Below are positions 44,014 through 56,195 of a stretch of 64,000 nt of DNA, one piece after another. The position numbers and the translations under genes were made by a program. The notes beneath the pieces were generated by a model. It made no database searches, was not told the origin of the DNA, and saw only the letters and a list, made by a program, of their open reading frames with translations. How positions within the stretch are numbered: the first letter of the stretch is position 1; the number at the start of each line of letters is the position of its first letter. The stretch spans positions 62,001 to 126,000 of the IMG/VR virus record IMGVR_UViG_3300024336_000005. One strand, 5' to 3'.

Positions 44014-44100
44014 ATGAACTGAAGTGATTTCTTTATTACAAACCATTTAAGTTGGGTAACGGCGTTGTGGCACCCATTAGAAGTTACACTATTTGTTCAT
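44014..44100 (+). ncRNA. putative Y RNA 2
   Basis: ATGAACTGA / TTGTTCAT; starts right after tRNA CCA. Confidence 0.7.
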
Positions 44101-44103
44101 TTT

Positions 44104-44455: not shown

Positions 44456-44456
44456 T

Positions 44457-44523
44457 ACGAACTGAAGATATTACGTTACCAAACTGTTAATTTGCTCATG
44501 CGTAATTTCAACCATTTGTTCGT
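44457..44523 (+). ncRNA. putative Y RNA 3 (minimal, carries an Asn-type anticodon loop)
   Basis: ACGAACTGA / TTGTTCGT; CAAA-CTGTTAA-TTTG. Confidence 0.7.
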
Positions 44524-44528
44524 TTTAA

Positions 44529-44602
44529 GGCAGTACACCACGGGCTGGTAGGTGCGGTTCATATTCGTCATCGCAAGGGTTCGAGTCCCTTTGCTGCTAC
44601 CA
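44529..44602 (+). tRNA. degenerate tRNA, probable CAU anticodon
   Basis: GGCAGTA/TGCTGCT acceptor, T-arm, ACCA; weak D and anticodon stems. Confidence 0.5.
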
Positions 44603-44641
44603 CTGACTAGGGTGAGGTCATCAATTTGAAAGACAGGACGA

Positions 44642-44908
44642 ATGCATCCTTTTAGAAAACATCTAGAGATAGAAACTACAAAATCAGGTTCTCTGATTTC
44701 TGTCTATGGACAACCTTCTTGGGTGCAACTTTTCTTTCTTTACATAGATGCTATGGATAAGATGGGACATTCTTTTTACAGAGACTCATCCTTCTACAAA
44801 GAGAGGCTAGAGCTTCTAATCAGAACGGGAAGGTCCAATCGAATTCGTATATGTTGCAGGACGCTTAATAAGCGTTCTAAAAAGCTTCTAAAAGAGATAG
44901 TTGATTAG
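44642..44908 (+). CDS. hypothetical protein
   Basis: ORF. Confidence 0.6.
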   Translation: MHPFRKHLEIETTKSGSLISVYGQPSWVQLFFLYIDAMDKMGHSFYRDSSFYKERLELLIRTGRSNRIRICCRTLNKRSKKLLKEIVD

Positions 44909-44916
44909 AGGAACAA

Positions 44917-45204
44917 ATGGCTTGCAAGATTTGTGGATACAGAAAGAATGTGGCCTTTGGATGCTACGGTCACGAAGAAGAGGCTAAAGTAGAAGAGCCA
45001 AAGGCTGCCGCTTCTTTTGAAATGATGGTTGTAAGCTATCAGTTGGATCGTGGATATGGCCAAGGCTGGGAGAAGCTTTTCACTTGTGCTGACAACAAGA
45101 ATCTTGCTGGTGATTGGCGTGTAACGCCTAATGAATATGGGCATTGGCCGGCTTCGCAGATGCAGAAGCATATGAGAAATGAGGGCCTTCCCCTCTCCGA
45201 TTGA
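44917..45204 (+). CDS. hypothetical protein
   Basis: RBS, ORF. Confidence 0.75.
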   Translation: MACKICGYRKNVAFGCYGHEEEAKVEEPKAAASFEMMVVSYQLDRGYGQGWEKLFTCADNKNLAGDWRVTPNEYGHWPASQMQKHMRNEGLPLSD

Positions 45205-45306
45205 AGATCATAACTGAAGATTCAGTCTTTGTTTGTAAGGCTCCCTACACCGAATGGGAAGACACTGGCAAGATTCCTTTCTGAAGTCTTATGAGAGAGA
45301 GTTAAA

Positions 45307-45693
45307 ATGACTATTGGTTATGTTATCGCCTGGGCTTTATTTTATGTAATGTGTTCAACTCCTTTCCTCTTTGCTGTGGTTTCATCTAGTGGAAAGCAAA
45401 TTGATGCCTTCATTGAGACAAAAGCACATTGGCCAACATGGCTATATGCGTCTTTTTGCTTTTTCATCTGGAGTGGAGTCTTTTTGCTTTCCCCTCTGAT
45501 CGCACTTGTTTTGGGGATTTTCTATTCGACAAAAGGACTAAAGATCTCCTATCGAGAAAGAGAAGTCGAACGGCAGTACATTCTTAAGAAAAGGGAGAGG
45601 ATGACAAAGCTTCAAAAGCGTTCTGGTGGCAGTCTCTCCCTCTCTAAAAACCGACAGCAGGGCATGCTTTCTAAAATTCCTATAGAAAAGTGA
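45307..45693 (+). CDS. membrane protein
   Basis: TM segments. Confidence 0.7.
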   Translation: MTIGYVIAWALFYVMCSTPFLFAVVSSSGKQIDAFIETKAHWPTWLYASFCFFIWSGVFLLSPLIALVLGIFYSTKGLKISYREREVERQYILKKRERMTKLQKRSGGSLSLSKNRQQGMLSKIPIEK

Positions 45694-45810
45694 AAAAGTG
45701 CCCAAAAATATTGTTGGGTTTTAGAAAAAGGATTTTTCAAAAATGACGCTATGGTTCCTTGGGTTTATTACCGGCGCCGGCGCCGGCCTTCTCGGCCATT
45801 CGATTTTAAC

Positions 45811-46122
45811 ATGGAAAAAGTAGCAGACCTTTGGAGGTTGATCCTCCACATTTGGGACTGGCTGAGAGTGAGCCTTAGGGCTCACGCAGAGAAGTTGATC
45901 CTAATTGTTATGTTTGTTCTTCTTGGTCTCATTGCTTGGGACTATTGGAACGATGAGATTGTAGTGAAACACACAGTTGATCTGTGTGCTCAAGAGGGGA
46001 ATCTTGGTTATCCCGACGAATGTGAATGCATCATCATGCAAGCACTTCTGCAAGAGGATGATCATGCAATGAAGAGACTCTTGGGCAAAGCAGGAGAGTG
46101 TAGGACTCTTCTGGGCGAGTAA
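45811..46122 (+). CDS. membrane-anchored protein
   Basis: start corrected to ATG 45811. Confidence 0.6.
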   Translation: MEKVADLWRLILHIWDWLRVSLRAHAEKLILIVMFVLLGLIAWDYWNDEIVVKHTVDLCAQEGNLGYPDECECIIMQALLQEDDHAMKRLLGKAGECRTLLGE

Positions 46123-46125
46123 AAT

Positions 46126-46165
46126 ACGGCAGTGGTGTAATGGTAGCACGAGGGATTCCAAACCT
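46126..46165 (+). pseudogene. 5' half of split tRNA-Trp(CCA)
   Basis: ACGGCAG..AGGGA-TTCCAAA-CC; pairs 7/7 with CTGCCGT at 46849-46855. Confidence 0.85.
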
Positions 46166-46172
46166 GTTGCAT

Positions 46173-46244
46173 ACGCCCTTAGCCAAATGGTAAGGCAGCG
46201 GATTCCAAACCCGTGATTTGTAGGTTCGATCCCTACAGGGCGTG
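46173..46244 (+). tRNA. trnW: tRNA-Trp(CCA), intact copy inside the split gene
   Basis: ACGCCCT/AGGGCGT, GCGGA-TTCCAAA-CCCGT, G73. Confidence 0.93.
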
Positions 46245-46246
46245 CA

Positions 46247-46795
46247 TTATTTAAAGGGGCCATCTTGATTTAGATAGTGATCAACTTGATGACAGGTAGG
46301 ACAAAGAATTTCTAAGTTCTCAATAGAACTATCAAGCTTATCTCTATTTTTATGATGAACCTGTAATACATTTGGATACTCACTCCATCCACATTGTGCA
46401 CAAACAAGTTTAAGTTGCTCAAAAGCAATGGCCCTGTATCCACCTTTTATATATCTACCATTTTTGTAGTTGCTTCCTTTGGAGCCTGATCTAAAAAAGG
46501 TGTTAGCACAGCTTCTGCTACAAACAGTCTTTTCTTTTGGATGTCCTTTAAGAGTCTCAAATTCCTTTAGGCATTGTGGGCATTCTTTTAATACTGTCTG
46601 ATACTTCCTTCTAGGATTTTTCCAATGAGAAATATCTAAAGCCTCTTTTGAAATTCTTGAACGCAGAGCCTGATAAGGCGCATTGTCTATTCCAAGAATT
46701 TCAAATAATTCCTTTCCGCAGGAAGCTGTTTCTACTGCTGCAGCGAAAGATTTAGTCGAATATAACCAGATTCTTGATTTCTTTTTGTGGTTCAT
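46247..46795 (-). CDS. HNH homing endonuclease (antisense, AT-rich)
   Basis: CPQC..CSRSC Zn finger; CAQCG..LQVHHKNRDK..NLEILCPTCH. Confidence 0.9.
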   Translation of the reverse strand: MNHKKKSRIWLYSTKSFAAAVETASCGKELFEILGIDNAPYQALRSRISKEALDISHWKNPRRKYQTVLKECPQCLKEFETLKGHPKEKTVCSRSCANTFFRSGSKGSNYKNGRYIKGGYRAIAFEQLKLVCAQCGWSEYPNVLQVHHKNRDKLDSSIENLEILCPTCHQVDHYLNQDGPFK

Positions 46796-46827
46796 GCATA
46801 CCTCCTAAGGACACAATAACAAAGATT

Positions 46828-46856
46828 CGGTCAGGGTTCAAGTCCTTGCTGCCGTG
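46828..46856 (+). pseudogene. 3' half of split tRNA-Trp
   Basis: CAGGG-TTCAAGT-CCTTG T-arm, CTGCCGT-G acceptor strand. Confidence 0.85.
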
Positions 46857-46878
46857 CAAAATGAAAGAAGAAAACAAC

Positions 46879-47130
46879 ATGCAAGCACATCACTATTTGA
46901 GAGATCACTTCATTCGCAACAATGCCCTCTCTCGTTCTGAAACTCCCTATGGACCTTATAGGGGCTATGTTACTGGTACGTCAGTCTATGATAAGGCTAG
47001 CGGCAATGTGACAGTAGAAGATATTAAGATCCTGAATGGGATTTCCTTTGGGCAAGCAACAGCTGTTAGAATCTGCAAGGAGAATCCTAACCGTATTCTC
47101 ATCAAGTACACTTGTGATTCGACAGACTGA
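46879..47130 (+). CDS. hypothetical protein
   Basis: start corrected. Confidence 0.65.
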   Translation: MQAHHYLRDHFIRNNALSRSETPYGPYRGYVTGTSVYDKASGNVTVEDIKILNGISFGQATAVRICKENPNRILIKYTCDSTD

Positions 47131-47312
47131 TGAATGTTAACGATGTAGTTACAGTAAAGGCAGGTCCTAATAAGACCCCTTATGAATGTCTTGTAAGGTA
47201 TATTTATCCTAATGAAGATGTCCTCTTGGAGCTTCCTAATTTTCTGGGGAACAACCTTAGGTATCAACGTTGGAATAAGTCCTTAAAGAAGTATCGGTCC
47301 GCAAGGACCTAA
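47130..47312 (+). CDS. hypothetical protein
   Basis: TGATG coupling. Confidence 0.65.
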   Translation: MNVNDVVTVKAGPNKTPYECLVRYIYPNEDVLLELPNFLGNNLRYQRWNKSLKKYRSART

Positions 47313-47318
47313 AGATTT

Positions 47319-47493
47319 ATTGAACTGAAGAGATCTAGGTTATCACTATAAAGGCTCGGCCCTCTTAACAGAGGTTTGCAGGTTCGAATCCTGTCGATCC
47401 GAAAGGATCGTGGCGAAATGGTAAACGCACCGAATATAAGTACCGGGGACCTTGAAAGAGGAATCCAATCTCCTAACTCGTCCCTTGTTCAAT
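47319..47493 (+). ncRNA. putative Y RNA 4, YrlA-type with permuted tRNA domain
   Basis: ATTGAACTGA/TTGTTCAAT; T-arm GCAGG-TTCGAAT-CCTGT, CGATCC-GAAA-GGATCG, D-arm GCG-AAATGGTAAA-CGC. Confidence 0.85.
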
Positions 47494-47498
47494 GATTT

Positions 47499-47583
47499 GG
47501 CTCTCAGGTTCCACGGTGGGACAACCGGCTGTAAACCGGTCGCGTTAAATCGCTACTAGGTTCGATTCCTAGGGGAGCCACCA
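47499..47583 (+). tRNA. trnY: tRNA-Tyr(GUA)
   Basis: ACCGG-CTGTAAA-CCGGT, variable arm, ACCA; extended D stem. Confidence 0.88.
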
Positions 47584-47584
47584 C

Positions 47585-47737
47585 GAAAGTCTGGTAGCAG
47601 TTCAGGATGTTTCCCTTAAGGCTCCTGGAGTGGGTGCAACTCCTATACTTTCATTAGAGGAGCTTATAGCCTGCAGGCTTGTAAGAGCGACAGTGTGGCC
47701 ACACTGTGATAGGGTTTGAGTCCCTGTGCCTCTGCCA
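47585..47737 (+). other. two degenerate tRNA-like elements (about 47585-47651 and 47656-47737)
   Basis: acceptor-like ends and T-like arms (GTGGG-TGCAACT-CCTAT; TAGGG-TTTGAGT-CCCTG, GCCA) but no canonical anticodon arm. Confidence 0.4.
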
Positions 47738-47740
47738 CAA

Positions 47741-47774
47741 TCGGAAGTAGTCTAATTGGCAAAACAGGGGCCTC
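47741..47774 (+). pseudogene. 5' half of a split tRNA (identity uncertain, possibly Gln)
   Basis: TCGGAAG-TA-GTCTAATTGGC; pairs 7/7 with CTTCCGA at 48652-48658. Confidence 0.8.
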
Positions 47775-47777
47775 GTG

Positions 47778-48488
47778 CTACTTGAGCCATTTGCGAATAG
47801 CATTATCAGTAACTCCGTAATGTCTTCCTGTTTTAGAATATCCCCATAGCTTTATTTGATCCAATAGAACTTCCTTGGAGGGTCTATTCAAAACCTTACG
47901 TCTTGAGTGGTCTGCCTGCCTTGCACAAGATCTACACCTAGCGGCTGTTGCTGAAATTTTTTCTTGACAGTCTTGACAATGATTTTGCTTCTTTTTGTGC
48001 GAAACATTTCGTCCAGCAAAGGTGGCCGTCTGGCTATTGCAATTAGGACAAAGAAAGCGCAAATTCTCTAATCTATGATCATTATTAATTCCATTGATGT
48101 GATCAAGAATTAATACAAGTAATTCTTCATTCCAAATATTGTTTTGCTTGCACAAGAGGCATTCATAAGGAATTACGCCCTCTTTTAGGATGCGTTGCTT
48201 AAGAGTGCCACGGCTGTAGGATGAATTCTTAATCATGTATTCCTCAAGGGGCTTGCCTCTTGAGGATGAAACCAGCCTTCTTGCTTCATTGTTTGTAAGA
48301 TCAATCCTAATTAATTCTTCTTGTAGGCAATATTTAATTGCTAATTCCTTTAGGATTCTGTATGTAGACCCACAGCGATTGGCAATGTTTAGGATCTCTA
48401 AAGCCTGGGCTCTCGATTCTGCTTGTTGTATTGCAGAAATAAATTCTATTTTGGGGACTTTATACAGGGGATGACTTTTCTTTCTCAT
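47778..48488 (-). CDS. HNH homing endonuclease (antisense, AT-rich)
   Basis: LILDHINGINNDHRLENLRFLCPNCNSQ; start set at MRKKSH with AGGAG RBS. Confidence 0.9.
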   Translation of the reverse strand: MRKKSHPLYKVPKIEFISAIQQAESRAQALEILNIANRCGSTYRILKELAIKYCLQEELIRIDLTNNEARRLVSSSRGKPLEEYMIKNSSYSRGTLKQRILKEGVIPYECLLCKQNNIWNEELLVLILDHINGINNDHRLENLRFLCPNCNSQTATFAGRNVSHKKKQNHCQDCQEKISATAARCRSCARQADHSRRKVLNRPSKEVLLDQIKLWGYSKTGRHYGVTDNAIRKWLK

Positions 48489-48500
48489 GATACTCCTTGA

Positions 48501-48583
48501 TCGGGGGTGATGAAACTGGCATATATGCTCGACTCTGAATCGAGTGCTTCGGCGTGAGGGTTCGAATCCCTCCTCCCGATCCA
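48501..48583 (+). tRNA. tRNA with CUG (Gln) anticodon on a class II (Leu/Ser-like) body
   Basis: CTCGA-CTCTGAA-TCGAG, variable arm TGCTTCGGCGT, U73, CCA. Confidence 0.85.
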
Positions 48584-48596
48584 ATGCATATTTGTT

Positions 48597-48625
48597 ATTA
48601 TATGGCAAAGTACAAATAATAGCAA
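48597..48625 (-). promoter_or_regulatory. sigma70-type promoter for antisense HNH
   Basis: TTGCTA-17bp-TATAAT on minus strand. Confidence 0.7.
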
Positions 48626-48630
48626 TATAT

Positions 48631-48662
48631 GTTTGCAGGTTCAAGTCCTGCCTTCCGAACCA
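48631..48662 (+). pseudogene. 3' half of split tRNA
   Basis: GCAGG-TTCAAGT-CCTGC, CTTCCGA-A-CCA. Confidence 0.8.
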
Positions 48663-48675
48663 TTAAGGAGATAAG

Positions 48676-48906
48676 ATGGATGCCTTAAGGGCGATCAAAG
48701 AGCATCAGTGGACGATTGAGCGCAAAGATAGTGACGTTCTGATAAGCATCCAAGGTAATCTGTCGTCAGATCACTTTGGTGATCTTAAGGACATGATTGA
48801 TGAGTTTTTGAGAGAGAAGTGTGAATGTGAGTCTTGTCAGGCTCCTGTTTATCTTTCAATGGAACTCTGTTCCCGATGCCATGTCTCTGAATATGGGCCA
48901 GCATAG
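48676..48906 (+). CDS. hypothetical protein
   Basis: AAGGAG RBS. Confidence 0.7.
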   Translation: MDALRAIKEHQWTIERKDSDVLISIQGNLSSDHFGDLKDMIDEFLREKCECESCQAPVYLSMELCSRCHVSEYGPA

Positions 48907-49055
48907 GCCCACAAAGATGGAGCTTCATCTAACCAATAGAGCCTGAACAATGATTACACTCGCATAGAGTGTTCACAGGCATGTGGCAACAAGGTAAATA
49001 CAGTATCCTGAATGAAACCTGTAGCAAATGATGAATACGCTACAAAACTGTATAT

Positions 49056-49131
49056 GGGAAGCTAACTCAATTGGCAGAGTAACGGGCTCTTACCCCGTAG
49101 GTTCTCGGTTCGAATCCGAGGCTTCCCACCA
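49056..49131 (+). tRNA. trnK: tRNA-Lys(CUU)
   Basis: ACGGG-CTCTTAC-CCCGT, ACCA. Confidence 0.93.
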
Positions 49132-49132
49132 T

Positions 49133-49250
49133 TTGAACTGAAGGATATTGGTTATCTTTTCTGAACAAAAACGTGCTGGGTTCGATTCCCAGGGGTTCCA
49201 TAAGGGGCCCGCAGGCGCCTAGTAAACTTCCGATTCCACCCCTTGTTCAA
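49133..49250 (+). ncRNA. putative Y RNA 5, YrlA-type
   Basis: TTGAACTGA/TTGTTCAA; T-arm CTGGG-TTCGATT-CCCAG then closed stem GGGTTCC-ATAA-GGGGCCC. Confidence 0.8.
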
Positions 49251-49451
49251 TTCATTCTAAAAGTTCCTATACAAATCTCAAAAAAGTCAGAAAAATATTT
49301 TGGGCTTTTGAAAAGATCTTTTCACCGTTCGAAAGGTGAAAAGGAACGCCTTAATCTAGCTACAACGAGTGGTTGTTTCAGTTCATCCCATCTCAATAGT
49401 TAGTTGCTGTCTCTAAATCAACTGAATAAAAGCAGCAAAGATTAAGGTCAT

Positions 49452-49525
49452 CGAGGTGCGCGCGCCTGGGCTGTGCGAGAGGATTGTCTATCCTCTGTGG
49501 GCGGGTTCGATTCCCGTCACCTCGG
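49452..49525 (+). tRNA. trnD: tRNA-Asp(GUC), atypical D arm
   Basis: CGAGGTG/CACCTCG, GAGGA-TTGTCTA-TCCTC, G73. Confidence 0.8.
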
Positions 49526-49686
49526 CACCCTTACTCCCAGATGGGAGGAGGAATAGTACGAGTTCACGTGGTATTTACACTACGATTATAACCTCTCCGT
49601 TTAAAATACTCCCTGAACTCGTAGTGACAAGTGTGAGTGGGACGCCACGCCTGAATGTATTCGACGGTTTACATTCAGCAACTTGT

Positions 49687-49763
49687 GGGGGAATCGTCAA
49701 GTGGTTTAAGACACCTGCTTTACACGCAGGCATGCGCAGGTTCGACTCCTGCTTCCCCTACCA
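49687..49763 (+). tRNA. trnV: tRNA-Val(UAC)
   Basis: CCTGC-TTTACAC-GCAGG, ACCA. Confidence 0.92.
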
Positions 49764-49985
49764 ATACTTTACGTTAAGTAGATCCCATACTGCATGATCC
49801 AGTGTGGCTCAAGCTGTACACTTGAGATAGGTGGTATTGCACCATCAAGCCTGAATACAAGGCAGGTCATAACTATATCTTCCCTGCCGTTGGCGGTCAG
49901 TCATCAACCTCTAAGAATGCCAGGAGGTCGGAAGAAAGTGGAACTGAACGGTGTGATGTTCCAGCTATTTCTTTAAGGAGGAAGA

Positions 49986-50628: not shown

Positions 50629-50640
50629 TTTTTCTCCTAT

Positions 50641-50719
50641 CTGCGCGTAGCTCAGTCTGGTTTAGAGTAACCGCCTTGGAAGCGGTAAGTCGTTGGTTCA
50701 AATCCAACCGTGCAGACCA
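50641..50719 (+). tRNA. trnP: tRNA-Pro(UGG)
   Basis: ACCGC-CTTGGAA-GCGGT, ACCA. Confidence 0.93.
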
Positions 50720-50737
50720 AAATATTCAATATTCCTT

Positions 50738-50765
50738 ATTATAACACAGACTTTTGTCTTGTCAA
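50738..50765 (-). promoter_or_regulatory. consensus sigma70 promoter for antisense HNH
   Basis: TTGACA-16bp-TATAAT with TG extended -10 on minus strand. Confidence 0.8.
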
Positions 50766-50780
50766 TAAGATTTGAATTAA

Positions 50781-50868
50781 CTAGCGAGCGGGCGGTGGAC
50801 GCCCAACCGTGCTGTACAGCGGTGGTGCTTTGATGCACAACTGGGTTCGATTCCTAGGCGCTAGACCA
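50781..50868 (+). tRNA. Tyr-like class II tRNA with 8-nt anticodon loop
   Basis: ACCGT-GCTGTACA-GCGGT, GTGC..GCAC arm, 5-bp D stem, ACCA. Confidence 0.65.
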
Positions 50869-50975
50869 CTGAAGAAGGAATCAAGAATGGATTGGGTCCC
50901 GTCTGAAATAGAAAATTACGTCCTAAAGGCAATGTATGGCCAAGAATTCTTCTATTGGCATCAAGAGGCAAAGAA

Positions 50976-51272
50976 ATGAAGCAAACCCTTATTGAATCCT
51001 TCCCTACAATTAAAGAGATGGAAGAAAAAGAGAAGAAGCGACAGATGGAGGCAAGCCAAGCAGTAGCGAACTATTGCACAAGGATTGGGAATCTCTTAAG
51101 AGATAAAGATGGATTTCCCCCCTACAGGATTGCTGAGCCAGCATTCCGAATCTCACCCGCTGTCCCCGTGAATCTTGCTCTTGTGTGGTTGAATGCCAAT
51201 ACGGAGTGGACGGTAACATTTGAAGCCGGAGATCGCGGGCGTGGGCACTATGTGTTCACTTTTCAGGAATAG
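50976..51272 (+). CDS. hypothetical protein
   Basis: ORF. Confidence 0.7.
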   Translation: MKQTLIESFPTIKEMEEKEKKRQMEASQAVANYCTRIGNLLRDKDGFPPYRIAEPAFRISPAVPVNLALVWLNANTEWTVTFEAGDRGRGHYVFTFQE

Positions 51273-51275
51273 AGA

Positions 51276-51461
51276 ATGATTATTCTACTTCTTGTCATCC
51301 TAATTGTAGTGTGTATACTCTCTATTATTGGGTTTCTTTCCTTGGAGGAAAGGGTAAGCAAGGGGGAGAGTGAGCGTGCGGCGATGAGGGTTCTCCTCTT
51401 TAATGAGGAGAAGGATCCTGTGATAGATGTATCTTATACAGAAAGAGGCCGGTATGGATGA
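51276..51461 (+). CDS. small membrane protein
   Basis: TM segment. Confidence 0.65.
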   Translation: MIILLLVILIVVCILSIIGFLSLEERVSKGESERAAMRVLLFNEEKDPVIDVSYTERGRYG

Positions 51462-51729
51462 TGTGATTGTTTCTGCAGCTGAGATGAGAGATAAGATGGT
51501 GGATGTAACTAATGAAGCCAACCGGGGCTTCTTGATTAAGTTGATGACTGACATCTCAATTGCTGCCGCTGCCGGTAAGGGATGTCTTTACTCGTATGAG
51601 ACTCAAGCAATCAAGAGAGTCGCTCTCCACTTAGAGCAAGCAGGATACACTCTTAAGTATGACAACTATCAGGATGAAAGAGATCCTGGTTCCAGAGCTA
51701 GCTATTGTATCACTTGGGGAAAGAGTTAG
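51454..51729 (+). CDS. hypothetical protein
   Basis: overlap; start corrected. Confidence 0.7.
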   Translation: MDDVIVSAAEMRDKMVDVTNEANRGFLIKLMTDISIAAAAGKGCLYSYETQAIKRVALHLEQAGYTLKYDNYQDERDPGSRASYCITWGKS

Positions 51730-51736
51730 GAACATA

Positions 51737-52033
51737 ATGGATTTGCAAATTGGGAACATCTTTGAGTCTGAAAAGCTGTGCAAGAAGCATGGCCTCTACG
51801 GAGCAAAGTTCCTTTGTGTAGGCGTCGAACACATTAGCGCTCGCGATGGCATGGGCGGCATGGATCAAGGCTCTCCTGCTAGCACTATACTCCGGTATCG
51901 TCTGGCCATCAATGGTAGCCTTAGCGGACAAACTCATATGCTAGAATGGAGTGGCTGGCATCCTAAGGACAAGCAATTTGAACCAGATGCAATCGTTGGT
52001 CAAGCCGAGTGGAAGCTTCCAGAATTGACCTAA
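51737..52033 (+). CDS. hypothetical protein
   Basis: start corrected. Confidence 0.7.
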   Translation: MDLQIGNIFESEKLCKKHGLYGAKFLCVGVEHISARDGMGGMDQGSPASTILRYRLAINGSLSGQTHMLEWSGWHPKDKQFEPDAIVGQAEWKLPELT

Positions 52034-52038
52034 GACAT

Positions 52039-52121
52039 GTGCCCTTTGGCGGAATGGTAGACGCACGTAATGGTCCCCTCCGGCTTAGAGGGGTGCAGGT
52101 TCGACTCCTGTAAGGGTGCCA
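52039..52121 (+). ncRNA. tRNA-like RNA lacking a normal anticodon arm
   Basis: acceptor, Leu-type D arm and T arm present; only CGTAATGGT then CCCCTC-CGGCTTA-GAGGGG. Confidence 0.6.
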
Positions 52122-52129
52122 TAAAATAA

Positions 52130-52215
52130 GGCTTGGTGGTGAAACTGGTAGACGCACCAGGCTCAAACCCTGGCGGGGTGAAAGCTCCGTGTCGGTTCGA
52201 TTCCGACCCAAGTCA
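52130..52215 (+). tRNA. trnL: tRNA-Leu(CAA)
   Basis: CCAGG-CTCAAAC-CCTGG, variable arm. Confidence 0.92.
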
Positions 52216-52218
52216 CAC

Positions 52219-52638
52219 ATGAAAGAAATTGAAATGCATATTGATAAGCAATTCTTAGTAAAGCGTAAGGCCTGCCAGCCACAAGTAGATTTATTTGTTG
52301 AGGCTTTTGGGGAGAAGGCTTCCGTTGAGGTGACTACAGAGAACCTCAAGAAAGCCTTCGCTGTTGGACTTGATGTTAGATGGCTGACTGGTCAGTTTAC
52401 TGAGCTCAAGCCCCTGCTAACAGGAAAGTTTGAGTCTTCTGAGATTGTAATCTACTTCCAAGATGGCTTGTTTCATCGTGAAGATGGTCCTGCCATCCAA
52501 TGGAAGGATGGCAATGGAAAGTTTTGGTATCGTCATGGAAAGTCCCACAGGACAGATGGTCCTGCAAGGATGACCCCATGGGGGGACAGCTGGTGGGTTG
52601 ATGGGGTTAAGCAACCCGCTCCCACTGATAAGACTTAA
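52219..52638 (+). CDS. hypothetical protein with HRxDGPA repeats
   Basis: FHREDGPAI, SHRTDGPAR; start corrected. Confidence 0.8.
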   Translation: MKEIEMHIDKQFLVKRKACQPQVDLFVEAFGEKASVEVTTENLKKAFAVGLDVRWLTGQFTELKPLLTGKFESSEIVIYFQDGLFHREDGPAIQWKDGNGKFWYRHGKSHRTDGPARMTPWGDSWWVDGVKQPAPTDKT

Positions 52639-52705
52639 AGCTGAGAGGAAAGCCCCATATTCTAGGAAGCCTTGACAGTTCGGAGAGACGAACGCTTTAT
52701 CTTAT

Positions 52706-53039
52706 CCAGGAGGTGGGCTTAGAAGCAGCCATCCTTTAAAGAGTGGGCATAGATGAAGCTTAACCGATTGATCTTATCTAATCATGACACGGATAGGAGA
52801 AGCTTAAGTTAGCACCTCTCAATAAATTCGAATTGGACCCAGGTTGGCTTCCTGGTTGGCCTTTACGAGAGAGTCTTGTAAGAAAGCGGGAAGAGACTTA
52901 GTCAGTCTTATAAAGAGAGCGAAACCGAACGCAACTCTTTGTTCTATTTTAGAACTGGTGTGAATCCTATGACGGGATGTATTTGGTTAACAAACGAGAG
53001 AATTGACTCTGCCCTCCTTTTAGCGTAATAGCACACTGG
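52706..53039 (+). ncRNA. 23S rRNA H43-H44 (uL11-binding GTPase centre) mimic with 278-nt insertion
   Basis: CCAGGAGGTGGGCTTAGAAGCAGCCATCCTTTAAAGAGT [insert 52745-53022] GCGTAATAGCACACTGG; no other rRNA sequence nearby. Confidence 0.85.
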
Positions 53040-53051
53040 ATAGATAACTTT

Positions 53052-53137
53052 GGCCGGGTGGTGGAACGGTATTCACACTGCGCTTAGAACGCAGCGCCCT
53101 TACGGGATTGAGAGTTCGAATCTCTCCTCGGCTACCA
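53052..53137 (+). tRNA. trnL: tRNA-Leu(UAG)
   Basis: CTGCG-CTTAGAA-CGCAG, ACCA. Confidence 0.93.
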
Positions 53138-53152
53138 TTAGAAAGAGATAAA

Positions 53153-53344
53153 ATGTTTCCAATAGTAAGACTCCTTGACGGAAGAGTTGCGCGTTTTGTT
53201 ATAGAGATGCGTGCCTATCCATCCCACATTGATAGATTCCAAACTCTTGGCAAGAACTCTCAGCAATTAGACCTCCCAGTTGAAGGGTGGACACTGGATG
53301 GTATTGAAAACCATCCAGAAAACCTCCAGTACAAAGAAAGATAA
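53153..53344 (+). CDS. hypothetical protein
   Basis: start corrected. Confidence 0.55.
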   Translation: MFPIVRLLDGRVARFVIEMRAYPSHIDRFQTLGKNSQQLDLPVEGWTLDGIENHPENLQYKER

Positions 53345-53347
53345 ACG

Positions 53348-53641
53348 ATGAGATATGTTTTGATGTGCCTTCTCTTCATGGGATGCACTACAGTGACCTT
53401 CCAGTTGGTGCCCACTCCTGCTCCTACTCTTCCTCCCTCGGCTCAGATGTTGATGGAGGATTGCGATGGCGTTACAGCAGATGATATTTATACACTCATT
53501 GAAGTCGAGCCCTGCAAAGGGCTCGTTCAGATGAGAGAACAAAGACTGTTAGATGCAGAGAGAATTTGTGAAGAATACTGCACTGAAAAAGATTGGTGCC
53601 ATGATCCAGATGAACGATTCGATTACGAAAGGGTAGAATAA
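53348..53641 (+). CDS. putative lipoprotein
   Basis: lipobox FMGC. Confidence 0.7.
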   Translation: MRYVLMCLLFMGCTTVTFQLVPTPAPTLPPSAQMLMEDCDGVTADDIYTLIEVEPCKGLVQMREQRLLDAERICEEYCTEKDWCHDPDERFDYERVE

Positions 53642-54369
53642 TGAAGTTGAACCAAGCTCTAGCCATTGAGACTGGCACGAAGACTAACACCAAGAGGAAG
53701 ATGACTGATCTTTACAAGCTGATTCAGAAGGCTTCTGCCTTTAATGGATTCGTAAAGACCTACGAGCCTCGAGCTGAAGATGGGATTGAGTTCCCGTCTG
53801 AGTCACAGGTTGTGCAGACGACCGCAGAGGAGGCTCTGCGGGGCGTCCTTGAGGCATCAGAGGAGCTGGTAAACATCACTGCTACGATTGCTTTCTCTAA
53901 CCTTTCTGCTCTTGCGGATGTGGTTGTTGACGGTGAGGTTGTGGCTAAGGATGTTCCTGCCACTCATCTGATCTACTTGGAGAAGCACCTGGCTGAGCTA
54001 GCGACTGTGGTCGCTGCTCTTCCGACGTTGGATCCAAGCAAGCAGTGGACCAAGAATGAAGCCACTGGATACTACGAGACGAAGCCGACAACGACTACTC
54101 GTACTCAGAAGATCCAGGAGGCTCTCGTTCTGTACCCTGCAACTCCTGAGCATCCAGCTCAGACTCAGCTCATCAGCAAGGATGTAGTGATCGGTGACTG
54201 GACTGTGATTTCACAGTCAGGTGCTATCCCTGCTCCTGAGAAGAAGAGGCTACAGAAGAGGGTTCAGTCCCTCCTAGAGGCCACGAAGATTGCTCGCGCC
54301 AAGGCGAACCTGGCTAACGCACCGCGTCAGGACCTGGGCACTGCGGTAAGCAACTTCCTTCTTGCATAA
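53641..54369 (+). CDS. conserved hypothetical protein (KLNQ..A.E.G family)
   Basis: MKLNQALAIETG, TYEPRAEDG, LEKHL, ATPEHPAQ; I recall similar proteins in actinobacteria and phages, function unknown. Confidence 0.85.
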   Translation: MKLNQALAIETGTKTNTKRKMTDLYKLIQKASAFNGFVKTYEPRAEDGIEFPSESQVVQTTAEEALRGVLEASEELVNITATIAFSNLSALADVVVDGEVVAKDVPATHLIYLEKHLAELATVVAALPTLDPSKQWTKNEATGYYETKPTTTTRTQKIQEALVLYPATPEHPAQTQLISKDVVIGDWTVISQSGAIPAPEKKRLQKRVQSLLEATKIARAKANLANAPRQDLGTAVSNFLLA

Positions 54370-54378
54370 GAATTCCGA

Positions 54379-54598
54379 GAGGACAATCTAAGATTTAATC
54401 TTAGACTAAACGTCACTGACATCTAGGTTCGAATCCTAGGCCCGCAACCATGTGCCTGCGCGATGCATCATAAGCAGCTCTTCAATGGGGGAGTGGTGGG
54501 TGAAAGTCCCATGGCACAACATAATGCGGGTTGGCGAAACTGGTATACGCGGGGACTTGTCCCTGTCAGACATGACACTTAAGCTTAAGCTATTCCTC
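54379..54598 (+). ncRNA. circularly permuted tRNA-like RNA on a long stem
   Basis: T-arm + GCCCGCA-ACCA precede TGCGGGT + D-arm; closed by CTGACA/TGTCAG and GAGGA/TCCTC. Confidence 0.8.
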
Positions 54599-54658
54599 TA
54601 CGCTTAGCTTGCTGAATCAATATCTAAATCAACGGATACAATCAAACTATAGGAAGAC

Positions 54659-54686
54659 GAAGGTTGGATTCCTTCCGGGGTGACCA
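54659..54686 (+). other. orphan tRNA 3' fragment
   Basis: GAAGG-TTGGATT-CCTTC, CGGGGTG-A-CCA; no matching 5' half seen nearby. Confidence 0.45.
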
Positions 54687-54687
54687 T

Positions 54688-54746
54688 AGATGAACTGTTT
54701 GAGAGGGGTTGATCATGACTTTTCGCTATGCACAGATGGTTCATCT
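54688..54746 (+). ncRNA. hairpin RNA, possible variant Y RNA
   Basis: AGATGAACTG / GGTTCATCT; lacks the exact UUGUUC strand. Confidence 0.4.
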
Positions 54747-54838
54747 TTAACACCTTGTCGTACAGCTGCAAGTACATCCTTTATAAAGCTCAGAGTGTAT
54801 CGATGCCGTTAGATAATGAGACAGGATAAAATAAAATT

Positions 54839-54873
54839 GGTCTAGCAGACAGGTTAGTTCTGCTGGACCACCA
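54839..54873 (+). ncRNA. 11-bp minihelix ending in ACCA
   Basis: GGTCTAGCAGA/TCTGCTGGACC + ACCA. Confidence 0.5.
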
Positions 54874-54874
54874 A

Positions 54875-54948
54875 GGGCCTTTAGCTCATTTGGGCAGAGC
54901 GCTGCACTTGCAATGCGGAGGTGATCGGTTCAATCCCGATAAGGTCCA
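54875..54948 (+). tRNA. trnA: tRNA-Ala(UGC)
   Basis: CTGCA-CTTGCAA-TGCGG, G3:U70. Confidence 0.93.
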
Positions 54949-54978
54949 GTTAGTTAGAATCATTGAAGGAAGAAGAAG

Positions 54979-55359
54979 ATGTTTAAAGATTGTATTCTTA
55001 TAGTTTGGGCTCCTGATGCAGCTAAACTTGAGAGCCTACCTTCAGGCTCAGTTGCTGCACTGATGGAGACAATGTGGTTTGCTCCTCCTGATCCTTATGA
55101 ATCCTTTCAATACTTGAAAGAGAAATTCAACATAAAGGACAGAGCTTTGCGTCTGGCTGGAAGGTCTTACGATCTTGATATCGTAAGCCTTAACCTATCT
55201 TCAGCTCAGATGAAAGAGTGGGCAAAGGATGCACACATTCCCTATCTTAGGTTTAATGAGACATCGTGGAAGGATCGGAACTTGGATGTTGGCGATTTAG
55301 CAGCTGTTACGATGTGTCTGTTGGGTTCATCAGACACTAGGTATATTGATACACTATAG
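54979..55359 (+). CDS. hypothetical protein, weakly Pth2-like
   Basis: ORF; C-terminal AHIPYLRFNE..G..AAVT pattern. Confidence 0.7.
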   Translation: MFKDCILIVWAPDAAKLESLPSGSVAALMETMWFAPPDPYESFQYLKEKFNIKDRALRLAGRSYDLDIVSLNLSSAQMKEWAKDAHIPYLRFNETSWKDRNLDVGDLAAVTMCLLGSSDTRYIDTL

Positions 55360-55372
55360 AAAGGGATTCGAA

Positions 55373-55636
55373 ATGAAGATTAATCGCGAGACAGAGAGTA
55401 CTTTTATTGCCGAGCTTAATGAGCTCGAGCTTAAGATTTTTGTGGGTCTGTTGGCCTTCGTTAGGATGGAAGAGACTGGTGCGGGTGAAGCTGTATATGA
55501 CATGCTTGAGGCATGTGAAGGCGCACTTGAGCTAAACGATGATGAGCTAGACGATCAGATCTTTAGCAAGGTCTTCTCCTATGAGGTTGATGGTGGCCAT
55601 CATGGACTTGATGTAAGTGGCTTTGATGTCCAGTAG
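55373..55636 (+). CDS. acidic hypothetical protein
   Basis: ORF. Confidence 0.7.
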   Translation: MKINRETESTFIAELNELELKIFVGLLAFVRMEETGAGEAVYDMLEACEGALELNDDELDDQIFSKVFSYEVDGGHHGLDVSGFDVQ

Positions 55637-56045
55637 TGGGGTCCATGATCTCATAAAGGAGAGGTTTAATCAGGGGGATGTGCGCGCCGGGTGCAGTTGT
55701 CCTGATGGATGGGTCCCCTTGGTTGAGAAGCTTGTGAATCATATCCACTGGGTCTTAACTCATGGGATCACATGGGACCAACAGCACGGTGGCTTTCCTG
55801 ATAGAAGTCTTGCCTTTGAGGTGACTCAAGTTAAGAGTAAGTTTGGCGGCCTTAGATTTTACTATGATATGCGAGGGGATACAGACTGTTCTCTCGCGTA
55901 TAAGATAAGAGGGGCGATGGCTTTTGCTGAGTCCCTCTCGTACACAATCTGTATGGATTGTGGTGCGACAGATGATGTTTGCATAAGGAAGCCGGGGTGG
56001 TTAGCTACCCTCTGTCCTTCTTGTGCTGCTAAAGGGGTGGCTTAG
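55626..56045 (+). CDS. conserved phage hypothetical protein
   Basis: GWVPLV..QVKSKFGGLRFYY..CMDCG. Confidence 0.8.
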   Translation: MSSSGVHDLIKERFNQGDVRAGCSCPDGWVPLVEKLVNHIHWVLTHGITWDQQHGGFPDRSLAFEVTQVKSKFGGLRFYYDMRGDTDCSLAYKIRGAMAFAESLSYTICMDCGATDDVCIRKPGWLATLCPSCAAKGVA

Positions 56046-56058
56046 CGGCCACCTTATT

Positions 56059-56195
56059 AAAGAACTGACGATTTTAGATTATCATTATACCAAACCAATA
56101 AAGAGAGGGTTCGACTCCCCAGGGATGGTGAAGTGGTTTCACACATAGGCTCAAATCCTATGGAATTCCTTATTCTAAATCAATTTTTGTTCTTT
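56059..56195 (+). ncRNA. putative Y RNA 6 with T-arm, D-like arm and anticodon stem-loop
   Basis: AAAGAACTGA/TTGTTCTTT; GAGGG-TTCGACT-CCCC; ATAGG-CTCAAAT-CCTAT. Confidence 0.75.

What the first reader, a model, noticed from the sequence alone, without database searches (positions are those of the whole stretch)
44457..56195. Y RNAs that display anticodon stem-loops
Seen: Y3 carries CAAA-CUGUUAA-UUUG (Asn loop), Y6 carries AUAGG-CUCAAAU-CCUAU (CAA loop), and Y4 contains CUCUUAA (Lys CUU loop) before its T arm. Established: many defence toxins cut specific anticodon loops (PrrC Lys, colicin E5-type QUN, VapC). Inference: Ro60-stabilised decoys that absorb or sense anticodon nucleases.
Basis: inference. 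Interest (0 to 1): 0.7.

Follow-up and report, generated by a model that had tools for sequence, protein, structure and literature searches.

The report
Phage Y RNAs inside tRNA array
A 204-kb marine phage that carries its own Ro60 gene also carries six small Y-RNA genes scattered among its tRNA genes; two of them do have anticodon-like hairpins, but these occur no more often than chance and are not kept in a related phage, so nothing found here supports the idea that they act as decoys for tRNA-cutting defence enzymes.

Summary
The window lies in a 204,008-bp phage record. It encodes a Ro60 ortholog at 40773-42416. Six paralogous elements lie in the 13.3 kb downstream (Y1-Y6, 42889-56192, + strand). 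Each starts GAACUGA(A/U/C)G, ends (C/U)UUGUUC, and most have (G/A)UUAUC at nt 17-24. Related Ro60 phages have the same family with compensatory changes in the terminal helix (GAAC/GUUC, GAGC/GCUC, GGGC/GCCC, GAUC/GAUC). They often carry the published Ro60 motif GNCGAAG. These are therefore real, unannotated Y RNAs. Rfam Y_RNA finds nothing and YrlA reaches only 21 bits.

- **Y3:** CAAA-CUGUUAA-UUUG is real and is in the minimum-energy fold.
- **Y6:** CAUAGG-CUCAAAU-CCUAUG is real and is in the minimum-energy fold.
- **Y4:** CUCUUAA is not a loop. It is half of a variable-arm-like hairpin, CCUCU-UAAC-AGAGG.

Anticodon-like 7-nt loops occur at the background rate (about 1.8 expected, 2 seen). 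The L007 orthologs keep the hairpins but not the loops.

Best reading: these are Ro60 adaptor RNAs cut out of tRNA-Y precursors, working with the phage's RNA-repair and tRNA-supply module. The decoy idea is unsupported but not excluded.

The parts
40773..42416 (+). Ro60 ortholog (547 aa, P0001)
   Evidence: Pfam TROVE 2.1e-39 and vWA_Ro60 9.3e-47; TROVE match in the phage's own genome.
42889..43078 (+). Y1, 190 nt. It lies 12 nt after the small ORF that follows Ro60 and ends 12 nt before the Metallophos gene. It has a T-like hairpin at 43042-43055 and the box CUAUAACGGCCCUAAGGUA at 42915-42933, which is shared with L039_a.
   Evidence: Starts GAACUGAUG, ends CUUUGUUC, GAUUAUC at nt 16-22; the MFE fold pairs the two ends.
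43091..43816 (+). Calcineurin-like phosphoesterase (Metallophos) gene next to Ro60
   Evidence: Pfam PF00149 and PF12850. The same neighbour is found in L007 and L012.
44016..44098 (+). Y2, 83 nt. It starts 3 nt after the CCA of tRNA-His and ends 5 nt before tRNA-Thr.
   Evidence: the fold pairs the ends and forms a 9-bp upper stem.
44459..44521 (+). Y3, 63 nt. It starts 3 nt after the CCA of tRNA-Glu(CUC) and ends 7 nt before the odd tRNA(CAU)-like element at 44529-44602.
   Evidence: The ortholog L007 13986-14050 is followed by the same tRNA-like element.
44480..44494 (+). Y3 apical hairpin CAAA-CUGUUAA-UUUG (an Asn-type GUU loop by sequence)
   Evidence: Unique in the window; in the MFE and centroid folds. 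Not conserved in L007_c, where the hairpin is GUGUGGGC-UGAGAG-GCCCAUAC.
47322..47490 (+). Y4, 169 nt. It ends 8 nt before tRNA-Tyr. It holds a YrlA-type permuted tRNA-like domain made of: closing stem UCGG/CCGA; variable-arm-like hairpin 47361-47374; T arm 47378-47394; GAAA-capped acceptor-like hairpin 47395-47410; D arm 47413-47428.
   Evidence: MFE cloverleaf. Best YrlA (RF02553) match in the genome, 47376-47428, 21 bits. Ortholog L007 14844-14992, with 9 compensatory pairs predicted by RNAalifold. A metatranscriptome contig covers 47154-47498.
49135..49248 (+). Y5, 114 nt. It starts 3 nt after the CCA of tRNA-Lys(CUU). It has a T arm at 49176-49192, a 7-bp acceptor-like hairpin at 49192-49210, and a weak A/U hairpin UUUU-CUGAACA-AAAA at 49157-49171.
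   Evidence: In the ortholog L007 13759-13874 the upper stem shows 3 double compensatory changes.
56062..56192 (+). Y6, 131 nt. It ends 5 nt before tRNA-Glu(UUC). It has a T-like hairpin at about 56108-56120 and a D-like hairpin GUGAA-GUGGU-UUCAC at 56128-56142.
   Evidence: Consensus fold with the ortholog L007 16516-16650.
56144..56162 (+). Y6 hairpin CAUAGG-CUCAAAU-CCUAUG, 1 nt after the D-like hairpin (a CAA, Leu-type loop by sequence)
   Evidence: Unique in the window; in the MFE and centroid folds. The stem is conserved in L007_e with 2 double compensations. The L007_e loop differs and can close down to 3 nt.

Best explanation
**What it is.** The interval holds four (Y3-Y6) of six paralogous Y-RNA genes of a marine jumbo phage that encodes its own Ro60. 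Y1 and Y2 lie just upstream of it.

**How the RNAs are made (inferred).** They are transcribed together with the phage tRNAs and cut out by the enzymes that trim tRNA ends. RNase P at the next tRNA would set the Y 3' end. The 3' trimming of the preceding tRNA would set the Y 5' end.

**How they bind Ro60 (inferred).**
- The paired 5' and 3' ends form a lower stem: a 4-bp helix, a bulged pyrimidine, and GA(A)G. This is a variant of the published Ro60-contact motif GGUCCGA / GNCGAAG.
- Above it come an internal loop, an upper stem and a UUAUC box.
- This scaffold is what the phage Ro60 ring binds and what stabilises the RNA.

**What the variable upper part does (inferred).**
- It is a permuted tRNA-like domain in Y4, Y5, Y6 and probably Y1, and a plain hairpin in Y2 and Y3.
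- It is the adaptor end. It brings Ro60 to proteins or RNAs that recognise the tRNA shape.
- The job is quality control or repair of the very large tRNA pool during infection.
- It works alongside the neighbouring RNA ligase and phosphoesterases, and possibly with a host exonuclease such as PNPase.

**The anticodon-like loops.** The loops of Y3 and Y6 are lineage-specific loop sequences on apical hairpins. In Y6 the hairpin stands where a tRNA has its anticodon arm. They are not conserved displays of particular anticodons.
For: **Shown by tool results**
- *Ro60 gene:* a Ro60 ortholog lies immediately upstream.
- *Six copies, all next to Ro60:* the combined pattern GAAC[UC]GA...UUGUUC occurs exactly six times in the 204-kb genome. 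All six are on the + strand within 13.3 kb after Ro60.
- *Same family in relatives:* related Ro60 phages carry it (L007 x6, L039 x2, L086 x2, L085 x2, L012, L008, L087).
  - In L085 the two copies sit just upstream of Ro60, in a locus with almost no tRNAs.
  - In L007, L008 and L012 a 50-53-nt copy sits between Ro60 and the phosphoesterase gene.
- *Terminal helix:* 44 of 44 cells are paired, 2 of 4 pairs covary, and 0 of 500 shuffles reach this.
- *Upper stem:* 3 double compensations between Y5 and L007_b. The T arm, the acceptor-like hairpin and the D arm of Y4 also compensate.
- *Ro60 motif:* L007 copies read GCCGAAG, which fits the GNCGAAN0-1G motif. Chen et al. 2014 relate that motif to the GGUCCGA contacted by Xenopus Ro60 (PMC4201824).
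- *UUAUC box:* UUAUC or UUA(A/C)C starts at nt 17-19 in 18 of 21 elements. UUAUC is the conserved loop motif of vertebrate Y RNAs and nematode sbRNAs (PMC4726728).
- *Spacing to tRNAs:* Y2, Y3 and Y5 begin 3 nt after a tRNA CCA. Y2, Y3, Y4 and Y6 end 5-8 nt before the next tRNA or tRNA-like gene.
- *RNA evidence:* a metatranscriptome contig ends at 47498, one base before tRNA-Tyr.
- *Neighbouring genes:* Ro60 sits among RNA-repair genes in every relative fetched except L085:
  - RNA ligase PF09414 and Metallophos in the window phage, L039 and L040;
  - RlaP in L039 and L086;
  - RtcB, RNase T and RNA ligase in L087.

**From the literature**
- Ro60 with a tRNA-like RNA partner is seen as an RNA-repair platform in jumbo phages (PMC7824862).
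- Phage phiLo Ro60 binds two phage Y-like RNAs and host PNPase in vitro (PMC12135203).
Against: - No Rfam Y_RNA match, even at E <= 10. YrlA reaches only 21 bits against a gathering score of 69.
- In the window phage the motif is UGAAG, not CGAAG.
- Single-sequence folding energies are not better than shuffled controls (z -0.4 to -1.9).
- Binding to Ro60, the processing sites and the partner enzymes are all inferred.
- The RNA evidence is one low-depth contig from a library that may contain DNA.
- No close relatives exist for a deep covariation test. Other contigs of the same phage are identical, and the metagenome scan found only the same phage.
Confidence: 0.6

Rival explanations
1. The Y RNAs are Ro60-protected baits whose anticodon-like hairpins (Asn GUU in Y3, Leu CAA in Y6) soak up host anticodon nucleases, competitively inhibit them, or report their activity.
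For: - Both hairpins exist and are in the minimum-energy folds.
- The Y6 hairpin stands 1 nt after a D-like hairpin, as an anticodon arm does, and its stem is conserved in L007.
- It shares the three loop-proximal pairs and 6 of 7 loop letters with the phage tRNA-Leu(CAA).
- The phage has tRNA-His, tRNA-Tyr and tRNA-Asp but no convincing tRNA-Asn(GUU). The GUU loop of Y3 is therefore the only GUU stem-loop found in the tRNA region.
- The genes around Ro60 are RNA-repair genes of the kind that answer anticodon nucleases (PMC7824862).
- A similar idea was floated for YrlA (PMC7790460).
Against: - The loops are not conserved in the L007 orthologs of Y3 and Y6.
- Only 2 of the 17 family members screened have such a loop in their MFE fold.
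- Their number equals the background rate.
- 12/17 identity to a tRNA stem-loop is also reached with a non-cognate tRNA.
- The Y4 example is wrong.
- The Y3 stem has only 4 A-U/G-U-type pairs and no tRNA body.
- Salmonella YrlA was not cleaved by the anticodon nuclease tested (PMC7790460).
- The host and its nucleases are unknown.
Confidence: 0.1
2. The elements are only processing punctuation of the tRNA array (spacers that guide RNase E, RNase III or RNase P). They have no relation to Ro60.
For: They are tightly spaced from the neighbouring tRNAs: 3 nt after a CCA and 5-8 nt before the next tRNA.
Against: - Members sit next to Ro60 without any tRNA array in L085. A mini copy sits between Ro60 and the phosphoesterase gene in L007, L008 and L012.
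- Y1 and Y5 are not followed by a tRNA.
- Most tRNA junctions in the window lack the element.
- The 5' strand matches the Ro60 motif.
Confidence: 0.05
3. They are decaying tRNA pseudogenes, and any stem-loops are leftovers.
For: - T arms in Y4, Y5 and Y6 match phage tRNA T arms significantly.
- The D arm and variable-arm hairpin of Y4 resemble the tRNA-Leu-like gene at 52040.
Against: - The non-tRNA ends, the upper stem and the UUAUC box are conserved with compensatory changes across phages whose Ro60 proteins are only 43-57% identical.
- The tRNA parts are in permuted order (T arm, capped acceptor hairpin, D arm), as in YrlA. Simple decay would not produce that order.
Confidence: 0.03

Closest known systems
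YrlA (Rfam RF02553), the tRNA-like Y RNA of Salmonella, Mycobacterium smegmatis and several phages (Chen et al. 2014, PMC4201824)
   Same: - Encoded next to Ro60.
- A 5' motif of the GNCGAAG type (exact in the L007 copies).
- A permuted tRNA-like domain in the order T arm, capped acceptor-like hairpin, D arm (Y4, L007_d, L086_b).
- A helix in the anticodon-stem position that leads towards the Ro60-binding end.
   Different: - Scores far below the family threshold (21 bits against 69).
- Both strands of the lower stem are conserved, and there is an upper stem plus a UUAUC box. In YrlA only the 5' strand is recognisable.
- There are six paralogs.
- They are embedded in a tRNA array.
- There is an extra variable-arm-like hairpin (Y4), or a hairpin in the anticodon-arm position (Y6).
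- Short members (Y2, Y3) have no tRNA-like domain at all.
Deinococcus radiodurans Yrn1
   Same: - Both strands of the Ro60-binding helix are kept.
- It can be drawn with a potential 'anticodon arm': a 5-bp stem and a 6-nt loop between D-like and T-like arms (PMC4201824). This is the closest precedent for Y6.
   Different: - The order of the arms relative to the ends differs.
- No sequence similarity was found.
- Yrn1 is bacterial, not embedded in a tRNA array, and known to tether Ro60 to PNPase.
Vertebrate Y RNAs and nematode sbRNAs
   Same: - A lower stem with a bulged pyrimidine, an internal loop and an upper stem.
- A UUAUC motif at the start of the loop (PMC4726728).
   Different: - No match to Rfam Y_RNA.
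- The lower-stem sequence is GAAC(U/C)GAAG rather than GGUCCGA.
- The ends would be made by tRNA-type processing rather than as RNA polymerase III transcripts with a U tail.
- The loop holds tRNA-like modules.
Thermus phage phiLo Ro60 with Yrl1 and Yrl2 (PMC12135203)
   Same: - A phage-encoded Ro60 with more than one Y-like RNA gene beside it.
- A stem-bulge-stem build with a CGAA-type motif.
   Different: - phiLo has two RNAs upstream of Ro60. Here there are six, downstream, among tRNAs.
- tRNA-like modules are present here.
- No experiments exist for this phage.
Phage answers to anticodon nucleases: the T4 Pnkp/Rnl1 repair pathway against PrrC, and phage tRNA sets that replace cleaved host tRNAs
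   Same: The same genomic theme: at least 32 tRNAs, a tmRNA, an RNA ligase and phosphoesterases around Ro60.
   Different: Those systems repair or replace tRNAs. No RNA decoy is known in them, and none is shown here.

Membership tests
Y RNA (Ro60-associated ncRNA, broad sense) | Encoded next to a Ro60/TROVE gene | tested here: met
   Ro60 lies at 40773-42416. Y1 starts 473 nt after it, and all six lie within 13.8 kb. The same linkage is seen in L007, L008, L012, L039, L085, L086 and L087.
Y RNA (Ro60-associated ncRNA, broad sense) | The 5' and 3' ends pair into a conserved lower stem with a bulge, followed by an internal loop and an upper stem | tested here: met
   Terminal helix: 44/44 cells paired, 2 covarying pairs, 0/500 shuffles reach this. 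The upper stem shows 3 double compensations.
Y RNA (Ro60-associated ncRNA, broad sense) | The 5' strand carries the Ro60-contact motif (GGUCCGA / GNCGAAN0-1G) | tested here: inconclusive
   The L007 copies fit exactly (GCCGAAG). L039_a, L086_a and L086_b have CCGAAG. All six window copies read ACUGA(A/U/C)G, a C-to-U variant.
Y RNA (Ro60-associated ncRNA, broad sense) | Bound and stabilised by Ro60 | not testable with these tools
   Needs a gel-shift or immunoprecipitation experiment.
Y_RNA, Rfam RF00019 (metazoan model) | Score at or above the 38-bit gathering threshold | tested here: not met
   No match at E <= 10 in the genome.
YrlA, Rfam RF02553 | Score at or above the 69-bit gathering threshold | tested here: not met
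   The best match is 21.1 bits, E 0.005, over the T arm, acceptor-like hairpin and D arm of Y4, 47376-47428.
YrlA, Rfam RF02553 | A permuted tRNA-like domain: T arm, then a capped acceptor-like hairpin, then a D arm | tested here: met
   Met for Y4, with compensatory changes in L007_d. Partly met for Y5, which has a T arm and a 7-bp capped hairpin but a poor D arm. Absent in Y2 and Y3.
tRNA (RF00005), taken as the test of 'anticodon stem-loop' | A 5-bp stem and a 7-nt loop with U33 and a purine at 37, placed between the D arm and the variable region of a cloverleaf | tested here: inconclusive
   - The Y6 hairpin has 6 bp and the loop CUCAAAU, with U33 and A37, 1 nt after a D-like hairpin.
- The Y3 hairpin has 4 bp and the loop CUGUUAA, with no tRNA body.
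- The Y4 string is not a loop.
- No Y is called a tRNA by Rfam or by default ARAGORN.
- The loops are not conserved in the orthologs.
Anticodon-nuclease decoy (no established family) | The stem-loop matches the nuclease's tRNA target and is bound or cut by the nuclease | not testable with these tools
   The host and its nucleases are unknown. Only the phage's own tRNAs could be compared (12/17 identity, not above chance).

The most novel reading that the evidence does not exclude
Some members of this phage Y-RNA family keep or have evolved a true anticodon-arm mimic. Examples are the D arm plus anticodon-type arm of Y6, and the GUU loop of Y3 in a phage that lacks tRNA-Asn. Held on Ro60, these mimics would act as competitive inhibitors, baits or cleavage sensors for host anticodon nucleases. 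The loop sequence would change from phage to phage to follow the host's nuclease repertoire.
Probability: 0.1. Interest if true: 0.8.

Novelty: new variant of a known kind. Interest (0 to 1): 0.5.

Why it matters
- Phage Ro60 and Y RNAs are known but barely studied, and what the tRNA-like end of bacterial Y RNAs is for remains open.
- This clade of marine jumbo phages offers six paralogs per genome with a common Ro60-binding end and different adaptor ends.
- The RNAs appear to be produced by the tRNA-processing machinery and sit in a conserved RNA-repair neighbourhood (RNA ligase, RlaP, RtcB, phosphoesterases).
- That makes the proposed link between Ro60-Y RNPs and tRNA damage directly testable.
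- The family also shares the UUAUC loop motif and the two-stranded lower stem with animal Y RNAs. This bears on how old the Y-RNA design is.
- Current models (Rfam Y_RNA, YrlA) miss the family, so such RNAs are probably under-annotated in phage genomes.

Tried and rejected
- **Rfam.** The gathering-threshold and E <= 10 scans gave no Y_RNA or YrlA hit in the interval. Direct searches with RF00019 and RF02553 in the genome gave nothing and 21 bits respectively.
- **Phage GenBank megablast** with 5 kb of the region: no match.
- **IMG/VR.**
  - The search with the Ro60 protein found no relative.
  - The search with the DUF7873 protein found two distant loci without Y elements.
  - The pattern GAACTGAAG...GGTTCGANTCC gave 24 chance hits next to ordinary tRNAs.
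  - The conserved 20-mer from Y4 gave none.
- **JGI metagenome scan** with the Y4 box: 35 hits, of which only one was real, and that one was the same phage from a sister sample.
- **Other contigs carrying the identical Ro60:** no differences over the up to 21.6 kb held for each, so no microdiversity to use.
- **Y6 as a chimera of tRNA-Leu(CAA).** Local alignment of each Y against all phage tRNAs is significant only for the T arms. The D/anticodon-arm resemblance is not above shuffled controls.
- **Y5 as a tRNA-Phe-like cloverleaf** (ARAGORN at 85% thresholds). Rejected because the L007 ortholog cannot form that acceptor stem, while the distal upper stem shows three compensations.
- **A tRNA-Asn(GUU) at 59071-59147** (ARAGORN at low threshold). 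It has a poor T arm and is judged spurious.
- **Expression.** The two seawater metatranscriptome runs give only patchy, low-depth contigs. Y2, Y3 and Y5 are not covered, and Y6 was outside the stretch laid.

Full report
**Setting**

The window is bases 62001-126000 of a 204,008-bp virus record. From about 22 kb onward it is a long array of + strand tRNA genes. ARAGORN finds 26 tRNA genes in the window and 32 in the genome, and Rfam also finds a 622-nt tmRNA. Small ORFs lie between the tRNAs.

At 40773-42416 there is a 547-aa ORF with TROVE (2.1e-39) and Ro60-vWA (9.3e-47) domains, a Ro60 ortholog. Gene calls on identical contigs place other RNA-repair-type genes nearby:
- an RNA ligase (PF09414), about 4.6 kb upstream of Ro60;
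- two calcineurin-like phosphoesterases;
- an adenylosuccinate-synthetase-like gene.

**The observation**

- Both form the stated hairpins in the minimum-energy and centroid folds. The Y6 stem extends to 6 bp.
- The third item does not hold. CTCTTAA at 47362 is a 7-mer of ordinary frequency. Its flanks cannot pair. It is half of the hairpin CCUCU-UAAC-AGAGG (47361-47374), which lies 3 nt before the T arm.

**What the 'Y RNAs' are**

Reading the flanks showed a shared frame. Each element starts GAACUGA(A/U/C)G and ends (C/U)UUGUUC.
- The combined pattern occurs exactly six times in the whole genome. All six are on the + strand between 42889 and 56192, directly downstream of Ro60.
- The elements are Y1 42889-43078, Y2 44016-44098, Y3 44459-44521, Y4 47322-47490, Y5 49135-49248 and Y6 56062-56192.
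- Y2, Y3 and Y5 begin 3 nt after the encoded CCA of tRNA-His, tRNA-Glu(CUC) and tRNA-Lys(CUU).
- Y2, Y3, Y4 and Y6 end 5-8 nt before tRNA-Thr, a tRNA(CAU)-like element, tRNA-Tyr and tRNA-Glu(UUC).

**Relatives**

The Ro60 protein has no close relative in IMG/VR. The large protein collection gave homologs at 43-57% identity, and their contigs could be fetched. These are phages that share conserved neighbour genes:
- phosphoesterase and RNA ligase near Ro60 in L039, L040 and L087;
- RlaP next to Ro60 in L039 and L086;
- RtcB and RNase T in L087.

They carry the same RNA family:
- **L007:** six copies with GAGCCGAAG ... CUUGCUC.
- **L039:** GAACCGAAG ... CUUGUUC and GAGCCGAAA ... UUUGCUC.
- **L085:** two copies with GGGCCG ... 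UUGCCC just upstream of Ro60, in a locus with almost no tRNAs.
- **L086:** GAACCGAAG ... CUUGUUC and GAUCCGAAG ... UUUGAUC.
- **L007, L008, L012:** a 50-53-nt copy between Ro60 and the phosphoesterase gene.

**Covariation**

- *Terminal helix:* on 11 short members, 44 of 44 cells are paired, two of four pairs covary, and none of 500 shuffles reaches this.
- *Upper stem:* RNAalifold on orthologous pairs adds an upper stem with three double compensations (Y5 with L007_b).
- *tRNA-like arms:* it also shows compensated T, acceptor-like and D arms (Y4 with L007_d).

**Motifs**

- The L007 5' strand, GCCGAAG, fits the motif GNCGAAN0-1G. Chen et al. 2014 found that motif in YrlA and YrlB and relate it to the GGUCCGA contacted by Xenopus Ro60 (PMC4201824). 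The window phage has a U in place of that C in all six copies.
- Eighteen of 21 elements have UUAUC or UUA(A/C)C starting at nt 17-19, right after the 5' strand of the upper stem.
- UUAUC is the conserved loop motif of vertebrate Y RNAs and nematode sbRNAs (PMC4726728).

Together these results make the Y-RNA assignment strong, although the Rfam models do not see the family.

**Anatomy of the variable parts**

- **Y4.** It folds on its own into a cloverleaf. The parts are: a closing stem UCGG/CCGA, a hairpin CCUCU-UAAC-AGAGG, UUU, a T arm, a GAAA-capped 6-bp hairpin, UG, and a D arm. This is the YrlA layout (T arm, capped acceptor-like hairpin, D arm), and it is where the YrlA model gives its best, sub-threshold hit. 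The extra hairpin and the T arm align significantly with the tRNA-Leu-like gene at 52040 (score 35, none of 200 shuffles as high). The D arm is close to that gene's D arm. The hairpin is therefore best read as a class-II variable arm.
- **Y5.** It has a T arm and a 7-bp capped hairpin.
- **Y6.**
- **Y2 and Y3.** They are short, with only an apical hairpin.

**Are anticodon stem-loops displayed?**

For Y6 the arm is real as a structure. In the L007 ortholog the hairpin is at the same place, with two double compensations and no broken pair. But its loop letters are GCUACGU, and it folds as a 9-bp stem with a 3-nt loop.

For Y3 the ortholog is L007 13986-14050. It is followed by the same odd tRNA(CAU)-like element. 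It has an 8-bp apical hairpin with the loop UGAGAG.

Other counts point the same way:
- Among 17 members screened from five phages, only Y3 and Y6 have a Y-U-NNN-R-N loop on a stem of at least 4 bp in the MFE fold. The four members found later were not screened this way.
- In the window such hairpins occur at 2.4 per kb outside tRNAs and Y elements. About 1.8 are therefore expected in 750 nt, and two are seen.
- The Y6 stem-loop is 12/17 identical to the phage's tRNA-Leu(CAA). The Y3 stem-loop is also 12/17 identical to a non-cognate tRNA-His.

The specific anticodon identities are therefore not supported as a selected feature.

**Points that keep the decoy reading alive**

- The position of the Y6 arm relative to the D-like hairpin.
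- The lack of a convincing tRNA-Asn(GUU) in a phage that has tRNA-His, tRNA-Tyr and tRNA-Asp.
- The recurrence of CUGUUAA in Y elements of three phages (a post hoc observation).
- The RNA-repair neighbourhood.
- A similar suggestion already made for YrlA by Hughes et al. 2020 (PMC7790460).

**Expression**

Two seawater metatranscriptome runs hold parts of the region. One contig covers 47154-47498, that is, all of Y4. It ends one base before tRNA-Tyr, as RNase P processing would give. Depth is low, DNA carry-over cannot be excluded, and the other Y elements are not covered.

**Mechanism proposed**

*Shown:*
- a conserved, covarying Y-RNA scaffold tied to Ro60;
- tRNA-like modules;
- tight spacing to the neighbouring tRNAs;
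- a conserved RNA-repair neighbourhood.

*Inferred:*
- The RNAs are released from tRNA-Y precursors by tRNA end-processing.
- The lower stem binds the phage Ro60.
- The variable ends act as adaptors that bring Ro60 to tRNA-recognising enzymes or to damaged or misfolded tRNAs. This would serve quality control or repair of the tRNA pool under host attack, possibly with host PNPase, as shown in vitro for phage phiLo (PMC12135203).

**Verdict**

This is a real and previously unannotated family of phage Y RNAs, a new variant of a known kind. The decoy function is unsupported by conservation or statistics but cannot be excluded without experiments.

Noticed in passing
window 42889-56192; L007, L039, L085, L086 elements: UUAUC (or UUAAC/UUACC) starts at nt 17-19 of 18 of 21 phage Y elements, right after the 5' strand of the upper stem. 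UUAUC is the conserved loop motif of vertebrate Y RNAs and nematode sbRNAs (PMC4726728). I know of no report of it in bacterial or phage Y RNAs (my own knowledge, not checked exhaustively).
   Followed up: partly
window 44484-44490 (Y3 loop) and 47365-47371 (Y4 hairpin); L007 14956-14962; L087 14999-15005: The Y3 loop CUGUUAA is the exact complement of UUAACAG in the variable-arm-like hairpin of Y4. UUAACAG occurs only 5 times on the + strand of the 204-kb genome. CUGUUAA also occurs in Y elements of L007 and L087, against about 0.1 expected in 2.1 kb. This could be a loop-loop contact or a sequence-specific site, but it is a post hoc observation.
   Followed up: partly
window 44529-44602; L007 about 14060-14152: ARAGORN calls this a tRNA-Met(CAU), but Rfam's tRNA model does not score it at all. 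It has an encoded ACCA, a good T arm, a covarying acceptor stem and a conserved GGUUCAUAUUC in the anticodon region, but a poor D arm and anticodon stem. It follows the Y3-type element in both phages.
   Followed up: partly
window 52040-52119: A tRNA-Leu-like gene (Rfam tRNA 28.6 bits, just under the threshold) directly before tRNA-Leu(CAA). After its D arm only about 10 nt stand where the 17-nt anticodon arm should be. A 6-bp hairpin, CCCCUC-CGGCUUA-GAGGGG, then lies before the T arm. It is paralogous to the tRNA-like domain of Y4.
   Followed up: partly
window 59165-59294 and 28894-28982: Two tRNA-like genes (Rfam tRNA 42.2 and 29.5 bits) have long insertions in the anticodon-loop region. 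ARAGORN with the intron option reads the first as carrying a 47-nt insert. Default ARAGORN misses both.
   Followed up: no
window 21962-22334: A non-coding stretch before tRNA-Lys holds two copies of an approximately 50-nt repeat (AAGAUACCCUUAA.UGGGCG.AGGGGUG.AAGGCCCCUA.GG), each followed by a T-arm-like hairpin (22066, 22300). The second-best YrlA-model hit in the genome lies at 22061-22110 (16 bits). The GGCCCUAAGGUA box also occurs in Y1 and in L039_a. This may be further tRNA-like or Y-like RNAs.
   Followed up: no
window, all tRNAs: Many phage tRNAs have unusual anticodon loops, for example Thr(GGU) GUGGUAU, Gln(UUG) UUUUGGU, Glu(CUC) UUCUCAU and Asp(GUC) UUGUCUA. No convincing tRNA-Asn or tRNA-Gly gene was found in the genome.
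   Followed up: partly
window 23869-24490: A phage-encoded tmRNA, 622 nt long with a large internal insertion (Rfam 83.5 bits). ARAGORN did not call it.
   Followed up: no
window 1-20000 versus 24000-64000: G+C falls from 55-62% in the first 20 kb to 43-49% in the tRNA/Ro60 region.
   Followed up: no
L040 about 13803-13887; L007 12974-13048: In two relatives, conserved tRNA-like genes carry a CUUAUAA (Ile UAU-type) loop and a long extra arm. ARAGORN does not call them. In L040 a possible 38-nt mini Y (13894-13931) follows.
   Followed up: no
window 44634-44785, 46206, 48369-48383: Every difference between the metatranscriptome contigs and the window is C>T (nine sites). This could be strain variation or a library artefact.
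   Followed up: no
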